Source: Fimbriosthenelais zetlandica
Lineage: Eukaryota
Length of the DNA: 64,000 nt
Direction: 5' to 3'
Assembly (NCBI GenBank): GCA_977030845.1
Contig: OZ365114.1
Location: 23,684,001-23,748,000, forward strand
Below the pieces are notes generated by a model that was not told the origin of the DNA, did not search any database, and worked only from the letters and a program-made list of their open reading frames with translations. The position numbers were made by a program, and so were the translations under genes. The stretch's first letter is position 1. Each line of letters begins with the position of its first letter. Positions 1 through 9,600 of this stretch are shown piece by piece.

Positions 1-2389
1 AGGAAGGTTTTAAAAAATAAACTATGAAATAAAGAGGGCATAAAAAAAAACATTTTTATAGTTTTCATATACAGATTGTTATTTCAGAGGCCTACAATTA
101 TTTCTCAGTTTTCCCTAGGCTAATATGGTACAAATCTTTTCAACCCCGGGTCCCAGGGGTGGTTAAACCATTCCTAGAAAATCTTCCAGATGGAGATAAA
201 CAGTACACCCTACTGGGCCACGAGCCACACTTCTTTTTAGGTCATTTCCTTGTTACCATGCACATGTCAGGGGGTTTCTTTGTGCTCGGGCAGACCTGGC
301 AATGACCTAGTGAGGAGCTCTGGGAACATCCCCTACCCATCAATCATTGTGAAGGACACGCCCTCCCATCATGACACCCCTCCCTCTCTCTGCCCCCGCC
401 TTGGTCGATACGGTGGCAGTCACCACCCACCGTCCAGGTCACGTGACCGGGAGTGATCACAGAGATGTGACAGATGATCTGACAGAGTGTGACACGTCCC
501 AGAGACGAGAACATGGTGTGCCTCGCGTGGACACTTAGTAAACAAATGGTGAGTCTAAAGTTACACCAGCACGTGGCTGGCACTTCCTTATAAAGCAATG
601 ATCTACACTCCACGGAAATCATCCACAGGGGGTCGAGATGGGAGGGTGGAGGTTGGAGGCAGACAAGGAAAATATAGACGAAAGACAGAGAAAAGTTCAC
701 ATTGTCAAGACAAATAAATAAATGACCCATTGAAAATGATTCTATTTTTATATGAAAAGAAATTTATAAACCTTAATAAGAATTGCTATAAATTAAAACC
801 GAAATTAAAAATAATGAAAGGAAAAGATGGAGAAAATAAGGAATTCCTCCTTCACCTCTCTACAAAAGTCAGGAGGTCAAATTGGCCAGAAGTCAAATGC
901 CAACAACCAGCATAAGTAATGTACCACACATTCATGGCACTTTGAAAAAGGGAGAAAAGGAGAGGGTAAAATTATGATCATTCCCCGTCCATCCATTCCT
1001 TTCTAACCAGATGGCCACGGTTTGACCAGCTGCCAAAAGAGTGCATATATACATGTATGTAAAGTTGGCAGAGCAGTCATTGTTGACTGCGAGCCAGACT
1101 CACAAGGGTTGAGTGGGGGCGGCATGTGTGTGTACTCAGTGGAAAAAGGGAACTGCTCCCTGCTCACACCCTCCCCATCCCCCTGCAGCCTCCCACCCAC
1201 CAATCCTCCTCCACCTCCGCCTGCTCCAGCCTCCCATCCTGGGTCGTCCCTGACCCAGATAACACCTCCTCCAGGCAGGCAGCAGTGGAGAACACCTGGG
1301 TCAGCCTATCACTAAACATCTTCTGCTCAGGACAAAGTATCTAAAAGAAATATTTAAAGGGCTGTCGGAGAGATGGGCCAGAAATTATTGGGACAACAGA
1401 GGTGGGCGATGTGTGTGCCGGCCAAAACTTGCAGCATCAAGATCATTCGGTTACCTTAGCTCCCAGGGCAGGAGCTATATCGGTAGCATATCTATAATGT
1501 CAACTTCAATTCACACAGGAGATCTTTTACCATTCTAGGTTCCACTAATGGCTTGTTTTTTTAGAAAGAGTTGGAGCATGGTTTCTTGCCAAAGCTTCCT
1601 ATATTTCATATAGAAATCATCCATCTTCATGAAATGATAGTCTGGTAGGAATCCTCAGACAAATTAACAGCGTGTTAATAAAGGTAATACACACTATATC
1701 TCTGATACACTGTTTGAAGTTTATACTTCGGGATCTCAACAAGTCTGAAAAGATCCAACCAGTGGAAAAAAACAGAGAAGATAGCACCCAGGGATCTTTT
1801 ATTGCATCTAAAACTGAAACAGCTTAAGTTCCAGTCCAAAAAACAGGAAGCTCCCCGACACAAATCCTTCAGAGGAGCTGCTCGAAGGTTGAACAGAAAA
1901 AAAAGAAAATAAATGACCACAAGTGAATAATTGATTGCCTTCTTGACATCCATCTCTCCTGGGGTAGACTAGGTTTTCATGTATCACTGCTGTGTTCCTT
2001 ACAACTTGAACCACGCCAAAGTCCTAGACCAGAGAACTACTCAACATGATCAAATTTGCTTTGATTTTTAATTTGGTGAAAGGTCCCCAAGAGAACGGTA
2101 ATCAACAAGATTGAACTTGCTTTTATTTTAACTTCGATGACAGGCCTTCCTATTCCAGATTTATCTCACCGAAGATGCACTACTCAAGACTTACAGCAAT
2201 CGATCTTACCTAATTTACATATCCTTCTATGCGCTAAGACCATTGGTTTAAAACAATTGCAACATAAGAATAGATATTAGAGAACATTTTTATAGAGCTA
2301 TTGTTAAACTACCTAATAAAGAACGCTTATAAATGACTGTCACTCGTTTATGTATTTTTACTTGGGAATAAAATAAATTTTTGACTTAC

Positions 2390-3068
2390 CCTCCGATGCA
2401 CCTCCTTTGCTGGAGACAGTCTCAAGTCGAGTAGTGACAGCCTCGAGGCGGGCAATGAGGTTTGACAGGTCTGCAGACATCTTAGCGTTGTGACCACCTT
2501 TAGCCTGTTGTGCCTTAGCTTCAGAAAGCAAGGTCTTCCCTTCAGAAAGTAGAATATCCAGATCTGTGGATGCCTCTATACGCTGGAGGTATTCTGAGAT
2601 GGAAGCTGTTGCGGACCTATCAGGAGAAGCAGCCTTAGTTGTAACTACCTGACCAGGGGCTATCTTAACGGGAGAGGATGCCTTGCCCTTTTCTGGTGAT
2701 TTTCTGGTCGGGGAAGTTGCCTTTTGAGGCGAGGGGTCCCTGACTGGGGAGGGTTGTTTCTTTTTGGGGGATTCTTTGGTAGGAGATGGGGATTTAGAGG
2801 GGGACTTTCGGGGGGACCCTTTGGTGGGACTTGGGGTTCTCTTGGTAGGGGAGCCTTTTGGGGGGTTAGCTTCAGCAGTAGTGGCCCTCTCTTCAAGGAT
2901 TACCTCATCAGGGGTGGCAGCAGTATTACCAATGGATTGTCCATTTGTATGCGTTTCAGTAGGTGGCGGGGTCTTGGACTTAGTATTGTGGGCGTTTGCT
3001 TCGTTGGGTGGAGACTTCCTCTGGTCTTTCTCATTGGGTGAGGGTGGACGCTTACGACAACATAACAT
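2390..3068 (-). CDS. CAP: First coding exon of adenylyl cyclase-associated protein (CAP/Srv2 family). Canonical start MSADLSNLIARLEAVTTRLE at 2480, preceded in frame by a 196-aa extension from ATG 3068. Gene continues left of the window.
   Basis: Translation contains the CAP N-terminal RLE motif twice (LIARLEAVTTRLE). Strong donor GAGG|GTAAGT at 2390/2389, phase 1. No further CAP-like exon recognised in 1-2389. Confidence 0.85.
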
Positions 3069-6000
3069 TGTCACAATCCAGGTGTGTGCAGTGGTGGAAG
3101 TGGTGGTGGTGCAAAAGGTGAACTACCAGATAGCTTATAGTAATGGTCGTGTCTCTCACTCGATCCTCAGCATGAGGGGTCAACTGGTCATGAGATTTCA
3201 CTTCAGGATGTAAGAGCACTTTAATACTGTTCAATAAGGGGATCTCTCCACAGAGGACTATTGTACCAAGCTGCGAGCTTAACTAGGTCCTTGCTGCCTG
3301 TATGACAACACGACATCGTCAGCAAATTCCAGCAAAGGAAAGGAAAAGAAAACGGAAGAAAAAGATGTCCATCAATATTAATCCATCCTGCTCTCAATAA
3401 TCTTTGAGGTATACTAAAGACATCATTAGGGATTGTTAAGTCACAACCTGGTGTGCTATTCAAACAACTGTCTAAGGGAAAAGGGACTTAGGAAAATACA
3501 AAAGACCAACTGGTTATAGTTCTAGTGTCACAAACAAGAGTGGTGCTAAAAAAAATTTTTATTTCAATAAGATATGAAATATATAATTATAGGTCTGACC
3601 TTTCAGATTCTTTTCCAAAAATTCTATGTTCAGTTTATCGAATTCCAGATGCAAATTGCACCAACAGTCCGTCAACCATTGGTCAAGCTAGCATGGCTAA
3701 TAAATTAACTAGAAAACTTCTAAATTAAATAAATGTTCACTCTTGCATGACACCAGCTGTTTTTTTTTTAAATTTTGTTCTGGAAACATACACGTTTGTA
3801 TCAAAATGTGAGAAAGGTCAAACATTAAGAGAAAAGACCACTGCATGACAAAATTGAAAACCTCTCATTCAACTAGCTAGACCGACACAACAAGACAATG
3901 GTCGGGGTAAAGAGTAACACACACAGACCAATGAAAACCTGTCATTCCACTATCTAGACAAATGGAAAGTATAGAGCACACGGACACACAGTTTTGTTTT
4001 CTATTGGATTAATGTAGTGTGTATTCCTGTGAATCTAGGATTAGCAAGTGTAGCTGCAATGGTATTTACATGTGTTTGTGTAGATGTTTTTATATTAATT
4101 TTGAAGCAGCCAAGTTCTTAGTGCTTTCTCTTCTATACCCAGATTAAACTGCTGAAGATCTATATTAGCACACTATACCATTTCTTTACAATATTTCCCC
4201 CCACTCATCCTGCAATTTTCTAAGCTCATCATGAACCCTGAGGGAAGGTAAATGATCTAAGAAAGCACTTATGGCAGCAGAATTGAACTGTAGGATTAGC
4301 AAGGACCAGAGAGCACCAGTGGTGTAAAGGTGTAGCACAACTGGAAAAGGGGTGTACCCAAAACAAGAATAATTCCTCGCGCACCCAAAGTACTGGGACA
4401 GAAGTGAGAGACGTGACCAGAGGGTATTAGGGACTATTTATAATATATTCATCAACATACCAGATGTCTGAAATGAAAACTTGTCAACAAAAATGGCTTT
4501 AAAGAATTTAACCTATTAATTTCTCCACACCTTCCCACCAAGGCCAACAGCCCAGTGGATCATAGAGGGGTAAGGGACGGGTTTAAAATTGGACCAGAAA
4601 GAGGGCACTTGGCAAGGGGTGTTTTTAAGGATTGGGGACCAAGGTATTCCCGGTAGAAAGAAATATTTCATCAAAGTTCTTAAAATTGTTTTAGCTTAAG
4701 TTCAAACTTACATGTGTATATTACAGATCTATATTGTATATTTGTCTCACTTCAGACATTTATCTCTACTTAGCTTAAAGATTTTAACTGGACATTACAG
4801 CTCTCTCCAAGAAAAATATTTAAATAGTACGAACTTAACTAAGGTATGTACCACCTCAGAAAAATAGAATTTATGACTTCAGAGTCACAAGACATAAGTT
4901 TCTTTTCAAATTTCCAGGGTTATTAAGCTATTATTTTACATAACTTAACATAATGTGATTTGCATTCGGTAGGAAAGAACTGGTCAAGCGTTAGATGCAG
5001 GCCAGAAAGAGAGAAATCTAGTGAGGTTTTGGAAAGAGCTGGAAAGCCAGAGGCAAAGCTAGAAATGTGATCATAACAGCTGCTTCACCATGCAGACGAA
5101 AGACCTTGAACTATATGATTAATATAGAAGTCAACTCTAGTGATAGATCACTAAACTCTAGAGGATGTCATCATATGGATGTGTTGTATACACATGTAAT
5201 TAGCATGCCTTTATATATACTCTACATCTATTGAAGAAAACAATTCTATCACATCGTTAAATAGATTTAAAAACATGCATGATTATGTAATCATTTTAAA
5301 TACAAAGCAATGACTACTTGAGTATATATTTTCTAGATCTTATATAATTACGATTTCATGAAACAGTAATAATCATTTTAGTGCAGTGATAAGTTGACAG
5401 TGCTATATCATATTGTGCAAAGTGGTGAATACTGAAATGATATTTCATAAATGGTTCTAAAACGTTACCTCATAGTTATTTTCGATAAGGAAAATGACAG
5501 AAGTATTAAAACTCTTTTCAGGTGATATCATTTCAAGTGTAAGCACGAAATTTTGAAAGCCAATACAGCGCGAGAAGGAAGCCTAAATTTAACCCTAAAT
5601 TTAAGACTTCCACAAGCATACGGTACTGCTAAAATGTTTTAATTAAGCTCCGACATGAACAACACCATTTTCTAAAATTGTCTGGGAAAGATATACAATT
5701 CAGTGTCTGGTAGGAACAATCGGATACCTGGTATCGATTAGGCCTAGTATGAATACAAAATGTTATGTTAATAAATTTGCCGGATCTCAAGTCAAGCCTC
5801 AAAAACGCGTCAAAGAAAAAGGATTTCATATGAAATGAATACAGACACGGTAAAATAATGGCACCTGTCTGTCATGGCAAAGTCCTATGTCTATGCATTA
5901 GAAATTAGCCGGCGAATAAATTCAAGATTGTCCATTGTCTCCTTTCTATGTTGGAGTAGACAATGCTAATTGTTATTGAATGCAAATAAATACTACACCA

Positions 6001-6396
6001 GACAGCAATATCAGAGGATTATCAAGACCTACTTGCCTCATATTGGGAAAAAGGCAACTCCTCCTTCAGACTCCACAGGTATATCTTTCCCACGTTAAGA
6101 TTTTGACTTGAGAACACAAAACCCGGAAATGCTTTGCTCTACGAGTCACATCTGTGTCAAAACTGGGGCGGAACTGTCAAACGGTGTGTCATGTGCTAAT
6201 TTCACGATGTTTCTACAATTTACATACGGTTCTGAGGCTCCTACGAGCATAATTCCACAAGGTTTTCACCTTGGTGGGTCCAAGAAACGATACAGAATGC
6301 ATATATTTATACAGGGTTTTCGAATTTTCCAATCTTTACTAAATATGGCCATTCATTTCTAACCGGCGAATGAGGTAAGGCGTAAACAACATGGGG

Positions 6397-6630
6397 GCGG
6401 CCATCTTGGATGAGCTGACCTAGCCGTGGTAAAGTCTACTTCAGACACGAATTCGAACACTTAACGGAGCAACAATGATCCAAAATGGGTCCCTACCGTT
6501 ACCGAAACAACTATCACTCACTTCAGATTGCTTTTAGTCTTTGTACAGAGCTAAGAACACCGTAAAACCTACCTTTTCCTTGTAGTGTTTGAATCCTGTT
6601 TATCCCTTTAGAGGGCGTGGCTGACCGGAA
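6397..6630. promoter_or_regulatory. Promoter-like module (YY1-type motif, GC-box, ETS core); candidate CAP promoter or a mobile-element promoter
   Basis: GGCGGCCATCTTGG 6397-6409 (AAGATGGCCGCC on minus), GGGCGTGG 6613-6620, CCGGAA 6625-6630. Motif matches only. Confidence 0.3.
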
Positions 6631-9600
6631 CAGGAAATAGATGATGGGATGTTGACCTAGTTTTAGATTCCCGCCAGAGCAGACGAAATTTCTGCTCAGC
6701 CAGCAGTTTGGTACCGAAGGCAACTGTCTGTGTAGCGTACTTATAGCATGAATCAACGATGGAATGATGATAAAAACTGTCCGTGTTCTTATTATAAGAT
6801 TATTTCCAAAGTACATGGCTTTCTGAGTCTCTTTATGTAGGTAGCCTACTGAGTAGGCCTAGGCTACGTGGGTAGGACCTGGGAGGGACCAGGGCAGTGG
6901 CCTATGGAACGTCAAATGTAGCCCTATTCAAAATATCTATCTGAAGCATAGACTGCGTGCCTTTAATAATAATACCGGTATTGCCTTATTTCTTAGAGAA
7001 TTATAGGCCAATGTCCAAGGCATAATAAAGAAAAAAAGATCAAAAAAGCATCCCTTGAGTTGAAATCCTTGAAACCAGAGCCTAGACCTAGGACTTAGGC
7101 TATAGTCGGATGAGATAGGCCCCTACCGGTAATTTAAAACTTAGGCGTATAATTCGTGAATATTTTTCTCTTAAATTATGCCATGGAAATTAAGTTCTAC
7201 GCTGATTGATACATCTATTTGTCAGGTCTATAGCCTTGGCCTAACATTCACAATGGATTTTATTCACACAGAGAAAAAAAACTATCATGTTCTGGTTTCT
7301 CCAGCGACTCACCTTTATTATAGGATCAACTCGCCTTTATTATAGGACTAATTATTTTTACATGATGCAATTAAACATTAAATGTACCGTAGAACGGGCA
7401 CTAGTAACTGATTTTTGATAATTCTTAGCCTAGGCCTATAGGATACGTCAATATGTCTACCTTTCACAAATGAGACTAATTTGACATTTAGGCTTAGGCC
7501 TAATTCACATGCATGCATCCTGCAACCCTTGTAAAAACTATTATTCTGGTCCACATGCATTTAAATTACCGTAAGTGAACAAATAGAATATTATATAGGC
7601 CTACAATTTGTTTTTGAAATCAATTAATATAGTGGCAGCAGCTAACCATAAACTTAGGCCTAGGCCTACATTAATTACATTTATCAAACAGTCAACGTAC
7701 CTCATAATAATGTTGGTAGATTTATTATAATTTACTAGAGGAGTTACAAAATAAATTAACATTGTGAATACTATTGGTGTCTGTAGTTGCTTCTTCTGTT
7801 CAGAGTTTACTATAATCCTCAATGTGTGCTGGTTGACACATCATGACGACCACCTAAACCAACAGCAATGGAGATGAGCAGCTTCACTGAAATCAATCAT
7901 ATTGAATTTAAATATTAAAAGTTCAATGTGTAGGCCTAATTAAAGTAGGATGAGGTTAACAAGTTATTAAAGTAAACCTTCATCCCACCAAAAGCCGAGG
8001 AATAACTAATGGTTTGGGCCTCCTCCGTCGAGGGTTCGAGATGTCTTTTTTTCTAAACTAAAGAGTGAAAAATAAGACATCTTCCCTCGGCTACCGGCCT
8101 ATTATGTAACGTGGAGAAGGGGTCTGAAGTGGGCATTTGTAGGCCTCTATGGGCCTAGTAGCTAAAACATTTTATATTATTATTTAATAGATTCTCAAAT
8201 CAGTGTTTCAATAAGGTGCCTATACAATAATGAAAAAAATACAATCCATCAGTTAATAGACTATTGTTCATATACACATGTATTCTTAATAAAATCCTAT
8301 TAAACAGATATTAAATATATCTGTAAAGGCTCACTGTACCTACTAACTCATATAGACGTTGGATTTCGATTTCAAAATGCCCAGACCATACGAAAGTAAA
8401 CATATAATCTACACTGTCTATAGGCCTAAACTAAAATTACAACATATCTCAAATAAATTGTAATAATTATTTGATCTCTTCATGAGAATATTGAAATATT
8501 ATTTCATAAAGACCCTTTGGTAACAGTTCCAAAACAAAAGCAAATTGAGAAATCAAACGCATGCATACATATTCAACATCACTCTTGAAGCCAATCAATC
8601 ATCTTCATTTAATTTGATTTAAATAAACAGTGAAATAAATTATATTCCTAACCAGTTAAGATTCGATCAATGTAAACTAAAGTCAAACCCCAATTCTAGT
8701 TAAATAATTATGAGAATATTGAAATCCGATTGGAATCCAACTGAAACTAAATCTCCATGGTCGAAAACCAAACAGAAGCTGTTAAGATCTAACCTTCACA
8801 ATCAACATTCATATCAAACTAATAATTCTAAAAATCACAAGTCTAAAATTCCTAAATCTGTCCTTCTCCAGGATATCAGAATATTCCTCGACAAAGTATT
8901 TCATCATCAAGCATATAATATCCTGAAAATGAATCCAAATCAACTCCCTATCCTTCGTACAAGTCCAACAAAACAAAGCAACTAATTATTCTGAAAATCA
9001 ACAATTATTCAGCTCCAATTCCTAAATCTGACTTCCCCAAATTAATAGTCCTACCTCAATCTATTGTCGGACACAGCTAATCCTAAGCTGAGCTATTCTG
9101 AAAAAATTACACAGAGAAATAAACACCAACCTCTTAGTCCAGTGGTCAAACTTCCCGCCAATGTTAGAACCGCTTTGGGTGTAGGCCTAGGCCTATATGG
9201 CTTCGAAGGTTACGACCAAGCTACTTCGGGCTTTCTAACCTCTTTTTTTGTCAAACTTATTAAATGAATATCTTTTTTATCCCTTTATATATGGATCCCA
9301 AATAAATGCATTTGAACAAAAAATGATGTAATATTGTGAAGGTTGATTGAAAATAGTGAGAGAATTAGAATAGGGGAAAACGCCACCAGTGGGGAATATG
9401 GAAACTAACGGCCAAGATGGCCGACGGAAACACCAATATATTTATCAAGGGAGCCTTAGCACTAATCACTAATATCAGGAAAATATGGATAATAAAACAC
9501 AAGGATACACTCCACCGTTGATTGAAATATTATTCCAGATACAAATGGATGGTTGATGGACTATAGCTACTAGGCCCATTGGCCTAATCTAGGATAAATA

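What the first reader, a model, noticed from the sequence alone, without database searches (positions are those of the whole stretch)
2481..3068. CAP with a 196-aa extension: GAP-43-like MLCC start plus a dense SPx[K/R] array
Seen: an open frame from ATG 3068 (A at -3) runs 196 codons into the canonical CAP start. It begins MLCCRKR and has 15 SP dipeptides, 12 fitting SPx[K/R] (SPTK x3, SPRK, SPSK, SPKK, SPVR, SPQK, SPTR, SPEK, SPVK, SPDR), then a short helical-looking segment (ISEYLQRIEASTDLDILLSEGKTLL). Established: GAP-43 starts MLCCMRR and is palmitoylated on those cysteines; SPx[K/R] is the full CDK consensus; SPKK-type repeats occur in sea-urchin sperm proteins; the CAPs I know start near the RLE motif. 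Inference: a membrane-anchored, phospho-switched long CAP isoform, possibly germline, ciliary or neuronal. A pyrimidine-rich AG at 2540/2541 could generate the short isoform.
Basis: partly seen in the sequence, partly recalled or inferred. Interest (0 to 1): 0.72.

Follow-up and report, generated by a model that had tools for sequence, protein, structure and literature searches.

The report
CAP protein with lipid-anchor head
This animal's only gene for CAP, a protein that recycles actin, very probably makes a longer form with a fat-attachment signal at its tip and a floppy tether; 13 other sequence groups (the one named source is an annelid worm) keep this layout, and no animal study of it was found.

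Summary
On the minus strand, ATG 3068 opens a frame of 196 codons that runs without a stop into the canonical CAP start (Met at 2480-2478). It has 15 SP and 12 SPx[K/R].

The extension is almost certainly coding:
- A relative whose synonymous sites are saturated keeps the same frame, the same start and the same first 14 residues.
- Only this frame is open in four sequences.
- Every copy checked has an in-frame stop just upstream.

Thirteen further sequence groups carry a CAP first exon with a Met plus Cys cluster (MLCC, MNCC, MFCCC, MSCCC and similar). One is an annotated annelid protein. Their linkers are 17-216 residues long, and all keep the canonical Met.

The conserved core is therefore the Cys cluster. 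The dense SPx[K/R] array is special to this lineage and one relative.

Best reading: a CAP tethered to membrane by S-acylation, through a disordered basic linker that is probably phosphorylated. A short cytosolic form may also start at the retained Met.

A working precedent exists only in Toxoplasma. No RNA runs were listed, so isoforms, tissue and the proposed AG acceptor remain untested. This scan holds no other note on this stretch.

The parts
3123..3125 (-). In-frame stop codon (TAG) 57 nt upstream of the long start, with no ATG in between
   Evidence: An equivalent in-frame stop lies 57 nt upstream in L011 and L012 and 30 nt upstream in L013. In L014 a TGA lies 6 nt upstream.
3048..3068 (-). 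Start codon and MLCCRKR head. Cys3/Cys4 plus a basic patch form the predicted S-acylation (palmitoylation) signal.
   Evidence: The first 14 residues are identical in L011/L012 despite 5 nucleotide differences, all between synonymous codons. A Cys cluster within the first 12 residues is present in 14 of 14 groups.
2610..3047 (-). Disordered linker, residues 8-153. The whole 196-residue extension has net charge +15. The linker includes an SP at residue 10, next to the Cys pair.
   Evidence: AlphaFold2 pLDDT is below 50 over most of residues 12-149.
2616..2852 (-). Array of 12 SPx[K/R] sites (residues 73-151); predicted targets of proline-directed kinases
   Evidence: About ten sites align with SPx[K/R] sites in L011/L012. 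The array is sparse or absent in other lineages.
2499..2609 (-). Two confident helices (residues 154-166 and 170-190) just before the CAP oligomerisation helix
   Evidence: pLDDT above 90. Conserved in L011/L012 and P0003, more loosely in L013, and helix-like in P0083.
2478..2480 (-). Canonical CAP Met (residue 197), kept as Met in every lineage that has the extension; a possible second start
   Evidence: The context is aagATGt, with A at -3.
2397..2480 (-). CAP N-terminal conserved motif, the oligomerisation helix
   Evidence: Pfam PF01213, E = 1.4e-5, above the curated cut-off. Helix 195-221.
2384..2390 (-). Exon end (G at 2390, phase 1) and the 5' splice site GTAAGT (2389-2384)
   Evidence: A donor in the same phase is conserved in L011/L012 (G|GTGAGT). 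L013, L014 and L015 also end the exon at a GT donor (GGTAAG or GGTGAG), but their phase was not compared. The next exon (ALTASVQAYDDIVNGPF...) lies at about G000:C21:23683250 and fits phase 1.
6565..6685 (-). Tentative: a conserved non-coding block about 3.5 kb upstream that ends in a donor-like AAG|GTAGGTTTT. It may be a leader exon or a promoter element.
   Evidence: It aligns with L011/L012 although synonymous sites are saturated.
6334..6410 (-). Tentative: a second conserved non-coding block holding CCAAGATGGCCGCCCCCATGTTG, which resembles a YY1 box
   Evidence: 79% identity over 77 nt to L011/L012. Indels of 1 and 2 nt just after it argue against coding.

Best explanation
What it is. The region 3068-2390 (minus strand) is the first coding exon of this genome's single CAP gene (cyclase-associated protein, an actin-turnover factor).

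The product, shown by comparison. Translation from ATG 3068 gives a CAP with a 196-residue N-terminal module made of three parts:
1. A head, MLCCRKR.
2. A disordered, strongly basic Ser/Pro/Lys linker of about 145 residues with 12 SPx[K/R] sites.
3. Two short helices that abut the CAP oligomerisation helix.

Mechanism, inferred.
- Cys3 and Cys4 are S-acylated by DHHC enzymes. Leu2 and the RKR patch supply the first weak membrane contact, as in GAP-43.
- CAP oligomers are thereby tethered to a membrane on a long flexible leash. This concentrates actin-filament disassembly and monomer recharging at the cell cortex.
- The basic linker probably adds electrostatic membrane affinity.
- Proline-directed kinases (CDK or MAPK type) probably phosphorylate its SPx[K/R] sites, which would weaken that contact.
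- The canonical Met is kept in every lineage, so a short cytosolic CAP is probably also made from it. An internal transcription start or alternative splicing is more likely than leaky scanning.
For: Part of CAP.
- The CAP_N-CM motif follows in frame.
- HFD and CARP exons lie downstream on the same strand, and this is the only such locus in the genome.

Coding.
- L011/L012 keep the start, the frame and the junction at 51-56% protein identity, with in-frame indels only.
- Against L011, pS is 0.75 (saturated) and pN is 0.31 over 192 codons.
- The first 14 residues are identical although 5 nucleotides differ.
- Flanking DNA is essentially unalignable apart from short blocks.
- Only frame 0 is open in all four DNAs. 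The chance of that under shuffling was 0 in 2000 for the window and about 0.01 for the others.

Family.
- Thirteen more groups have a Met plus 2-3 Cys within 12 residues, a linker of 17-216 residues, and then the CAP motif.
- One is KAK2166283.1 of the annelid Paralvinella palmiformis, whose annotated CDS includes the extension.
- Upstream reading frames in CAP genes that lack the module look like junk and have no Cys-Cys.

Anchor.
- MLCCRKR is close to GAP-43's MLCCMRR, and MLCCMRRTKQ is used as a transferable S-palmitoylation tag (PMC7768372).
- In Toxoplasma, a 36-residue CAP extension with C6/C8 gives a membrane-bound apical isoform. It is lost in the C6,8A mutant, and a short isoform starts at M37 (PMC6785269).

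Disorder and helices.

Retained Met: 14 of 14 groups keep it, and there is one other in-frame Met in 1,579 extension residues.
Against: - No transcript, ribosome or peptide evidence exists for this species: no sequencing run was listed.
- S-acylation is inferred from sequence alone; no predictor or assay was available.
- The SPx[K/R] array is lineage-specific, so any phospho-switch cannot be the conserved function.
- Some relatives have near-neutral linkers, for example P0009, P0013 and P0016. That weakens the electrostatic part of the model for the family.
- The window extension holds four out-of-frame ATGs, so a short form cannot easily arise by leaky scanning.
- The transcription start, and whether ATG 3068 lies in exon 1 or exon 2, are unknown.
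Confidence: 0.65

Rival explanations
1. The 196 codons are an untranslated leader that happens to be open. CAP is made only from the canonical Met at 2480.
For: Low T content makes stops rarer here, and antisense frames of 105 and 149 codons also stay open. There is no RNA or protein evidence. Two tiny upstream ORFs precede ATG 3068.
Against: - The frame, the start and the first 14 residues are conserved at saturated synonymous divergence.
- The shuffle probability of an open frame is below 1/2000 here and about 0.01 in each of three other DNAs.
- The same Cys-cluster start recurs in 13 other groups.
- Indels between relatives are in frame.
Confidence: 0.04
2. The extension is translated, but the Cys cluster is not a lipid anchor. 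It could bind a metal, form disulfide-linked oligomers, or act as a redox sensor. The S/P/K-rich linker would then bind actin, microtubules or nucleic acid directly.
For: - A conserved Cys in the CAP oligomerisation domain has been implicated in covalent dimers (review PMC7543520).
- KSP/SPKK-type basic repeats bind polyanions in other proteins (my own knowledge, not tested here).
- Cys number and spacing vary: CC, CCC, CCxxC, CxxC.
Against: - Two to three adjacent Cys right after Met1, with a hydrophobic residue 2 and flanking basic residues, is the classic S-acylation layout. It differs from GAP-43's proven signal at two positions.
- The only CAP tested with such a head is membrane-bound through its Cys residues.
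- No His/Cys partners for a metal site lie nearby.
Confidence: 0.15
3. The long form is the only product in this lineage. The retained internal Met is structural and no short isoform exists.
For: There is a single CAP gene and a single exon carrying the CAP motif. Four out-of-frame ATGs block leaky scanning. The proposed internal AG acceptor is not conserved.
Against: The Met is invariant in 14 of 14 groups while its neighbours vary, and in-frame Met is nearly absent from 1,579 extension residues. Toxoplasma makes both forms.
Confidence: 0.3

Closest known systems
Toxoplasma gondii longCAP / shortCAP (Hunt et al., eLife 2019, PMC6785269)
   Same: A CAP with an N-terminal extension carrying two Cys. 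Those Cys are needed for membrane (apical) localisation. There are phosphosites in the extension, and a second in-frame Met at the canonical start gives a cytosolic short form.
   Different: The extension there is 36 residues, against 196 here. The Cys lie at positions 6 and 8, not at 3 and 4. The paper reports it as restricted to Toxoplasma, Neospora and Hammondia. By my own knowledge, apicomplexan CAP has only the C-terminal half, so the extension there does not precede the oligomerisation helix. The two are most likely convergent.
GAP-43 / neuromodulin N-terminal palmitoylation signal (MLCCMRRTKQ)
   Same: Met-Leu-Cys-Cys followed by basic residues. The GAP-43 decapeptide alone is used to drive membrane targeting of reporters (PMC7768372).
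   Different: Only the head resembles GAP-43. No Neuromodulin or IQ domain was found at E up to 1. The rest of the protein is CAP.
Canonical animal CAP1/CAP2, Drosophila Capulet, C. elegans CAS-1/2
   Same: The oligomerisation motif, HFD and CARP domains are present in the same order.
   Different: The described proteins start at the oligomerisation motif and have about 475 residues. The 2020 field review describes no extension and never mentions palmitoylation (PMC7543520).
KAK2166283.1, hypothetical protein LSH36_40g12005, Paralvinella palmiformis (annelid)
   Same: An annotated CDS with a 170-residue extension, a Cys-Cys pair near the start (residues 10-11), SP-rich disorder, a helix, the retained Met, and then CAP.
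   Different: The Cys pair is preceded by 9 residues. There is only one SPx[K/R]. The model is partial (303 residues) and uncharacterised.
Multi-site proline-directed phosphorylation arrays (CDK substrates, neurofilament KSP tails) and polybasic electrostatic switches such as MARCKS
   Same: Dense S-P-x-K/R sites in a disordered, basic segment next to a lipid anchor. The comparison rests on my own knowledge of those systems.
   Different: No phosphorylation data exist here. The array is confined to two or three lineages and evolves by in-frame repeat expansion.

Membership tests
CAP / Srv2 (cyclase-associated protein) | N-terminal conserved oligomerisation motif (Pfam PF01213) | tested here: met
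   E = 1.4e-5, 25.8 bits against a cut-off of 19, at residues 203-224. It is the only hit above the family cut-off at E <= 0.001 in the genome; a second place, on C1, scored 21.9 bits at E = 0.098 with two stops inside.
CAP / Srv2 (cyclase-associated protein) | Helical folded domain (PF21938) and CARP domain (PF08603) downstream in the same gene | tested here: met
   Exon-wise hits on the same strand at C21:23680782-937, 23672729-821 and 23641232-23642020. Further HFD exons were read directly. That the exons are joined in one mRNA is inferred, not shown.
GAP-43-type N-terminal S-acylation signal | Adjacent Cys within the first residues after Met1, a hydrophobic residue 2, flanking basic residues, and no Gly2 | tested here: met
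   MLCCRKR. 14 of 14 groups have 2-3 Cys in the first 12 residues.
GAP-43-type N-terminal S-acylation signal | Cys residues actually acylated and required for membrane binding | not testable with these tools
   Needs acyl-biotin exchange or metabolic labelling, plus Cys-to-Ser mutants.
GAP-43 / neuromodulin protein family | Neuromodulin N-terminal region with an IQ motif | tested here: not met
   A Pfam scan at E up to 1 returned only CAP_N-CM and a weak unrelated hit. This is not a family member; the resemblance is limited to the head.
Dual-isoform CAP of the Toxoplasma type | A second in-frame Met at the canonical start | tested here: met
   Met197 is retained in 14 of 14 groups.
Dual-isoform CAP of the Toxoplasma type | Two protein isoforms actually produced | not testable with these tools
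   No RNA run was listed. Out-of-frame ATGs are not depleted, so leaky scanning is not favoured.
CDK/MAPK multi-site phospho-cluster | A dense [ST]-P-x-[KR] array in a disordered region | tested here: met
   12 sites in 79 residues. None of 5000 shuffles reached this. pLDDT is below 50.
CDK/MAPK multi-site phospho-cluster | Conservation of the cluster across orthologues | tested here: inconclusive
   Kept in L011/L012 (18-20 sites) and partly in L013 (4), but only 0-2 sites in the other ten groups.
SPKK DNA-binding motif proteins (sperm histones) | Repeated exact SPKK units attached to a histone fold | tested here: not met
   One exact SPKK only, and no histone domain.

The most novel reading that the evidence does not exclude
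Many invertebrates make two CAPs from one first exon. One is an ancient long form, S-acylated and tethered to membrane. The other is a short cytosolic form that starts at the retained internal Met. In this lineage the tether has grown into a 12-site SPx[K/R] array. That array would act as a cell-cycle or MAPK-driven electrostatic switch, releasing CAP, and with it actin disassembly and monomer-recharging activity, from the cortex.
Probability: 0.3. Interest if true: 0.7.

Novelty: new variant of a known kind. Interest (0 to 1): 0.55.

Why it matters
CAP is a core, universally conserved factor in actin turnover, and in animals it is treated as a soluble cytosolic protein. A conserved, lipid-anchored long form would give cells a direct way to place filament disassembly and monomer recharging at a membrane.

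So far this idea has been tested only in Toxoplasma. The head is small, transferable and easy to mutate, so it can be tested directly. The module also shows how a short anchor plus a freely evolving disordered tether (17 to 216 residues, with repeat expansion) can be bolted onto a housekeeping protein.

The module sits in public data as ORF fragments and one 'hypothetical protein'. The papers searched here do not describe it for animals.

Tried and rejected
RNA evidence. Two searches for sequencing runs (kinds rna and any) listed none. Read laying was therefore never used, and isoforms, transcription start and tissue remain open.

Searches that found nothing useful.
- ESM Atlas search: no usable hit.
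- Rfam on the whole window: nothing.
- Paper search for the sample accessions: nothing.
- Paper searches for CAP with palmitoylation or S-acylation: only the Toxoplasma work.

Limits on the relatives.
- No DNA was available for P0003, so its upstream frame is unknown.
- P0004's long N-terminus is a gene-calling artefact: a TGA was read through. With the standard code the ORF starts MFSCC.
The length filter ties candidates to the query length and no spliced reference exists, so the taxonomic spread is a lower bound.
- The organism could not be named.

Ideas tested and not supported.
- Leaky scanning. Out-of-frame ATGs are not depleted: there are 4 in the window, and P(<=observed) is 0.85.
- Internal acceptor at 2541/2540. 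It is not conserved in L011 or L013 and is only moderately pyrimidine-rich. This is unsupported but not excluded.
- A tandem-repeat origin of the window's SP array. No DNA repeat was detected here, unlike in L011.

No complex prediction was run, because no binding claim is made.

Full report
**1. Observation**

On the minus strand an ORF starts at ATG 3068-3066 (context gacaATGt, A at -3) and reads MLCCRKRPPSPNEK... It runs 196 codons into MSADLSNLIARLEAVTTRLE. The exon ends at G 2390 and is followed by GTAAGT.
- Pfam places the CAP N-terminal conserved motif at residues 203-224 (E = 1.4e-5, above the cut-off).
- The extension has 15 SP dipeptides.
- None of 5000 amino-acid shuffles reached either count.
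- The reading frame is the only one of six without stops (0 stops, against 3-20 in the others).
- None of 2000 dinucleotide-preserving shuffles left it open.
- An in-frame TAG lies 57 nt upstream with no ATG in between.

**2. Gene context**

The window is G000:C21:23684001-23748000.
- The genome has one CAP locus. The only CAP_N-CM hit above the family cut-off at E <= 0.001 is this exon; a second place on C1 scored 21.9 bits at E = 0.098, with two stops inside.
- HFD exons lie at C21:23680782-937 and 23672729-821.
- CARP exons lie at 23641232-23642020. All are on the same strand, so the gene spans about 46 kb.
- Reading the DNA below the window shows the next exon (ALTASVQAYDDIVNGPF...IGG) at about 23683250. 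It fits the phase-1 donor. Two further HFD exons were also read.

The gene looks intact. That the exons join in one mRNA is inferred.

**3. Is the extension coding?**

*Closest relative.* A protein search found two ORFs, P0001 and P0002, on long contigs of one ENA assembly (loci L011 and L012). Their flanks are nearly identical, so they count as one lineage.
- They cover 96% of the query at 51-56% identity.
- They start with the same 14 residues, MLCCRKRPPSPNEK.
- They keep an SPxK-rich middle and a conserved helical segment.
- They run into MSSDLTNLITRLE and end at a donor in the same phase.
- Against L011, synonymous sites are saturated (pS 0.75), while pN is 0.31 over 192 aligned codons (0.19 in the CAP motif).
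- The 14 identical first residues hide 5 nucleotide differences, all between synonymous codons.
- At DNA level, blastn finds only two blocks inside the exon: around the ATG (85% over 54 nt) and the CAP motif. The 5' flank and the intron are essentially unalignable.
- All protein-level indels are in frame. L011 and L012 differ from each other by an 11-residue repeat unit.
- L011's array is a 33/66-nt tandem repeat.

*Other DNAs.* In L011, L012 and L013 too, only frame 0 is open (shuffle probability about 0.01 each), and an in-frame stop precedes the ATG.

I put the probability that the extension is translated at about 0.9.

**4. A family, not a one-off**

An exhaustive profile-free search and two profile searches added more first exons of CAP genes from metagenome and genome assemblies.

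| Source | Start of the ORF | Extension length |
|---|---|---|
| L013 (standard code) | MFSCCMKDPE | 146 |
| P0005 / L014 (TARA) | MNCCRKR | 90 |
| L015 / L016 | MPFCCRRSRR | 17 |
| P0008 | MFCCCRQD | 64 |
| P0009 | MLCCCPSS | 96 |
| P0010 / 11 / 14 (Arg/Asp/His-rich linker) | MSCCCPDS | 128-162 |
| P0012 | MLCCVKQK | 93 |
| P0013 | MLCCCRER | 77 |
| P0016 | MLCCVGCK | 93 |
| P0045 | MFCCCRQD | 86 |
| P0052 / 53 / 83 | MSKSSFRDLCCF | 170 |
| P0067 | MPGCFAC | 107 |

- P0083 is KAK2166283.1, a 'hypothetical protein' of the annelid Paralvinella palmiformis. Its annotated, spliced CDS includes the extension.
- In all 14 groups, counting the window, there are 2-3 Cys within the first 12 residues and the canonical Met is kept.
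- Extension length ranges from 17 to 216 residues.
- The alignment also shows an (E/D)SP about ten residues in, a VSPxSVx(L/I) motif, and a (L/I/V/F)D(P/A)KM junction. These point to a common origin rather than convergence.
- Many other CAP first exons begin directly at MSGDL... Where an ORF happens to extend upstream in those, it looks like translated leader and has no Cys pair.
- The dense SPx[K/R] array is not a family trait. There are 12 sites here, 18-20 in L011/L012, 4 in L013 and 0-2 elsewhere.

**5. Anatomy**

AlphaFold2, run on a five-row alignment, gives the following:
- pLDDT below 50 for most of residues 12-149.
- Three confident helices (pLDDT above 90) at 154-166, 170-190 and 195-221. 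The last is the CAP oligomerisation helix.

The extension has net charge +15, and +16 within residues 69-151.

**6. Mechanism**

*Shown:* a conserved coding module whose invariant part is a Met-proximal Cys cluster with a hydrophobic residue 2 and nearby basic residues.

*Inferred:*
- S-acylation of Cys3/Cys4 gives membrane tethering.
- The head differs from GAP-43's MLCCMRR at two positions. The decapeptide MLCCMRRTKQ is in routine use as a transferable S-palmitoylation tag (PMC7768372).
- In Toxoplasma gondii, CAP carries a 36-residue extension with two predicted palmitoylation sites. The long form is membrane-bound and apical, and the C6,8A mutant is cytosolic. The extension is phosphorylated on egress. 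A short cytosolic form starts at M37 (PMC6785269).
- The basic linker would add electrostatic affinity that phosphorylation at SPx[K/R] could lower. This last step is the weakest, because the array is lineage-specific.

**7. Is there a short isoform?**

- The canonical Met is invariant in 14 of 14 groups while its neighbours vary.
- Only one other in-frame Met occurs in 1,579 extension residues. This fits continued use as a start codon but does not prove it.
- Out-of-frame ATGs are not depleted (4 in the window), so leaky scanning is unlikely here.
- About 3.3-3.6 kb upstream lie two conserved non-coding blocks. One ends in a donor-like AAG|GTAGGTTTT. The other holds a YY1-like CCAAGATGGCCGCC.
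- A pyrimidine tract with a conserved CTGAC precedes a possible acceptor near 3298. ATG 3068 may therefore lie in exon 2 behind a leader exon. This is tentative.

**8. Comparison and novelty**

The protein is a CAP by all tested domain criteria. It is not a GAP-43 family member, since no such domain was found.
- The 2020 field review describes CAP as starting with the oligomerisation domain and never mentions palmitoylation (PMC7543520).
- Four paper searches found no animal CAP with an acylated extension.
- The concept, a lipid-anchored long CAP plus a short form, is known from Toxoplasma. The module here is different and much longer, sits in front of the oligomerisation helix, and is widespread among invertebrate sequences.

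I rate it a new variant of a known kind.

**9. Limits**

- No RNA runs were listed.
- The organism and most relatives are unnamed.
- Full-length annotated long CAPs could not be searched because of the length filter.
- Acylation and phosphorylation are predictions.

Noticed in passing
window 6565-6685 and 6334-6410 (minus strand): Two non-coding blocks are conserved with L011/L012 although synonymous sites are saturated. The first ends in a donor-like AAG|GTAGGTTTT and holds a GCCACGCCC box. The second holds CCAAGATGGCCGCCCCCATGTTG, which resembles a YY1 box. They may be the CAP promoter or a leader exon.
   Followed up: partly
window 3150-3175 (minus strand), and L011 about 5968-5994: Tiny upstream ORFs lie in the leader before the long start: 3 and 5 codons in the window, 7 codons in L011. 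They may tune translation of the long form.
   Followed up: no
L011 6220-6478, compared with L012: The SPxK array of the relative is a 33/66-nt tandem repeat (3.9 copies of 66 nt, 89% matches). It differs by one 11-residue unit between the two haplotype-like contigs. The tether therefore evolves by in-frame repeat gain and loss.
   Followed up: partly
L013 259-438: The database protein P0004 starts 60 codons too early, because the source's gene caller read through a TGA as in an alternative genetic code. With the standard code the ORF starts at MFSCC.
   Followed up: yes
window 2724-3213 (plus strand): Antisense ORFs of 105 and 149 codons overlap the extension. They are by-products of the C-rich, T-poor coding strand. 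In the relative that carries P0003, a gene caller chose a similar antisense ORF in place of the extension.
   Followed up: partly
alignment A7; P0005, P0009, P0016, P0012: Two short motifs recur in the extension in several otherwise divergent lineages: (G/S)SPSKENLV about 20-30 residues in, and VSP(D/N/S)xVx(L/I) about 20-45 residues before the canonical Met. Their function is unknown.
   Followed up: no
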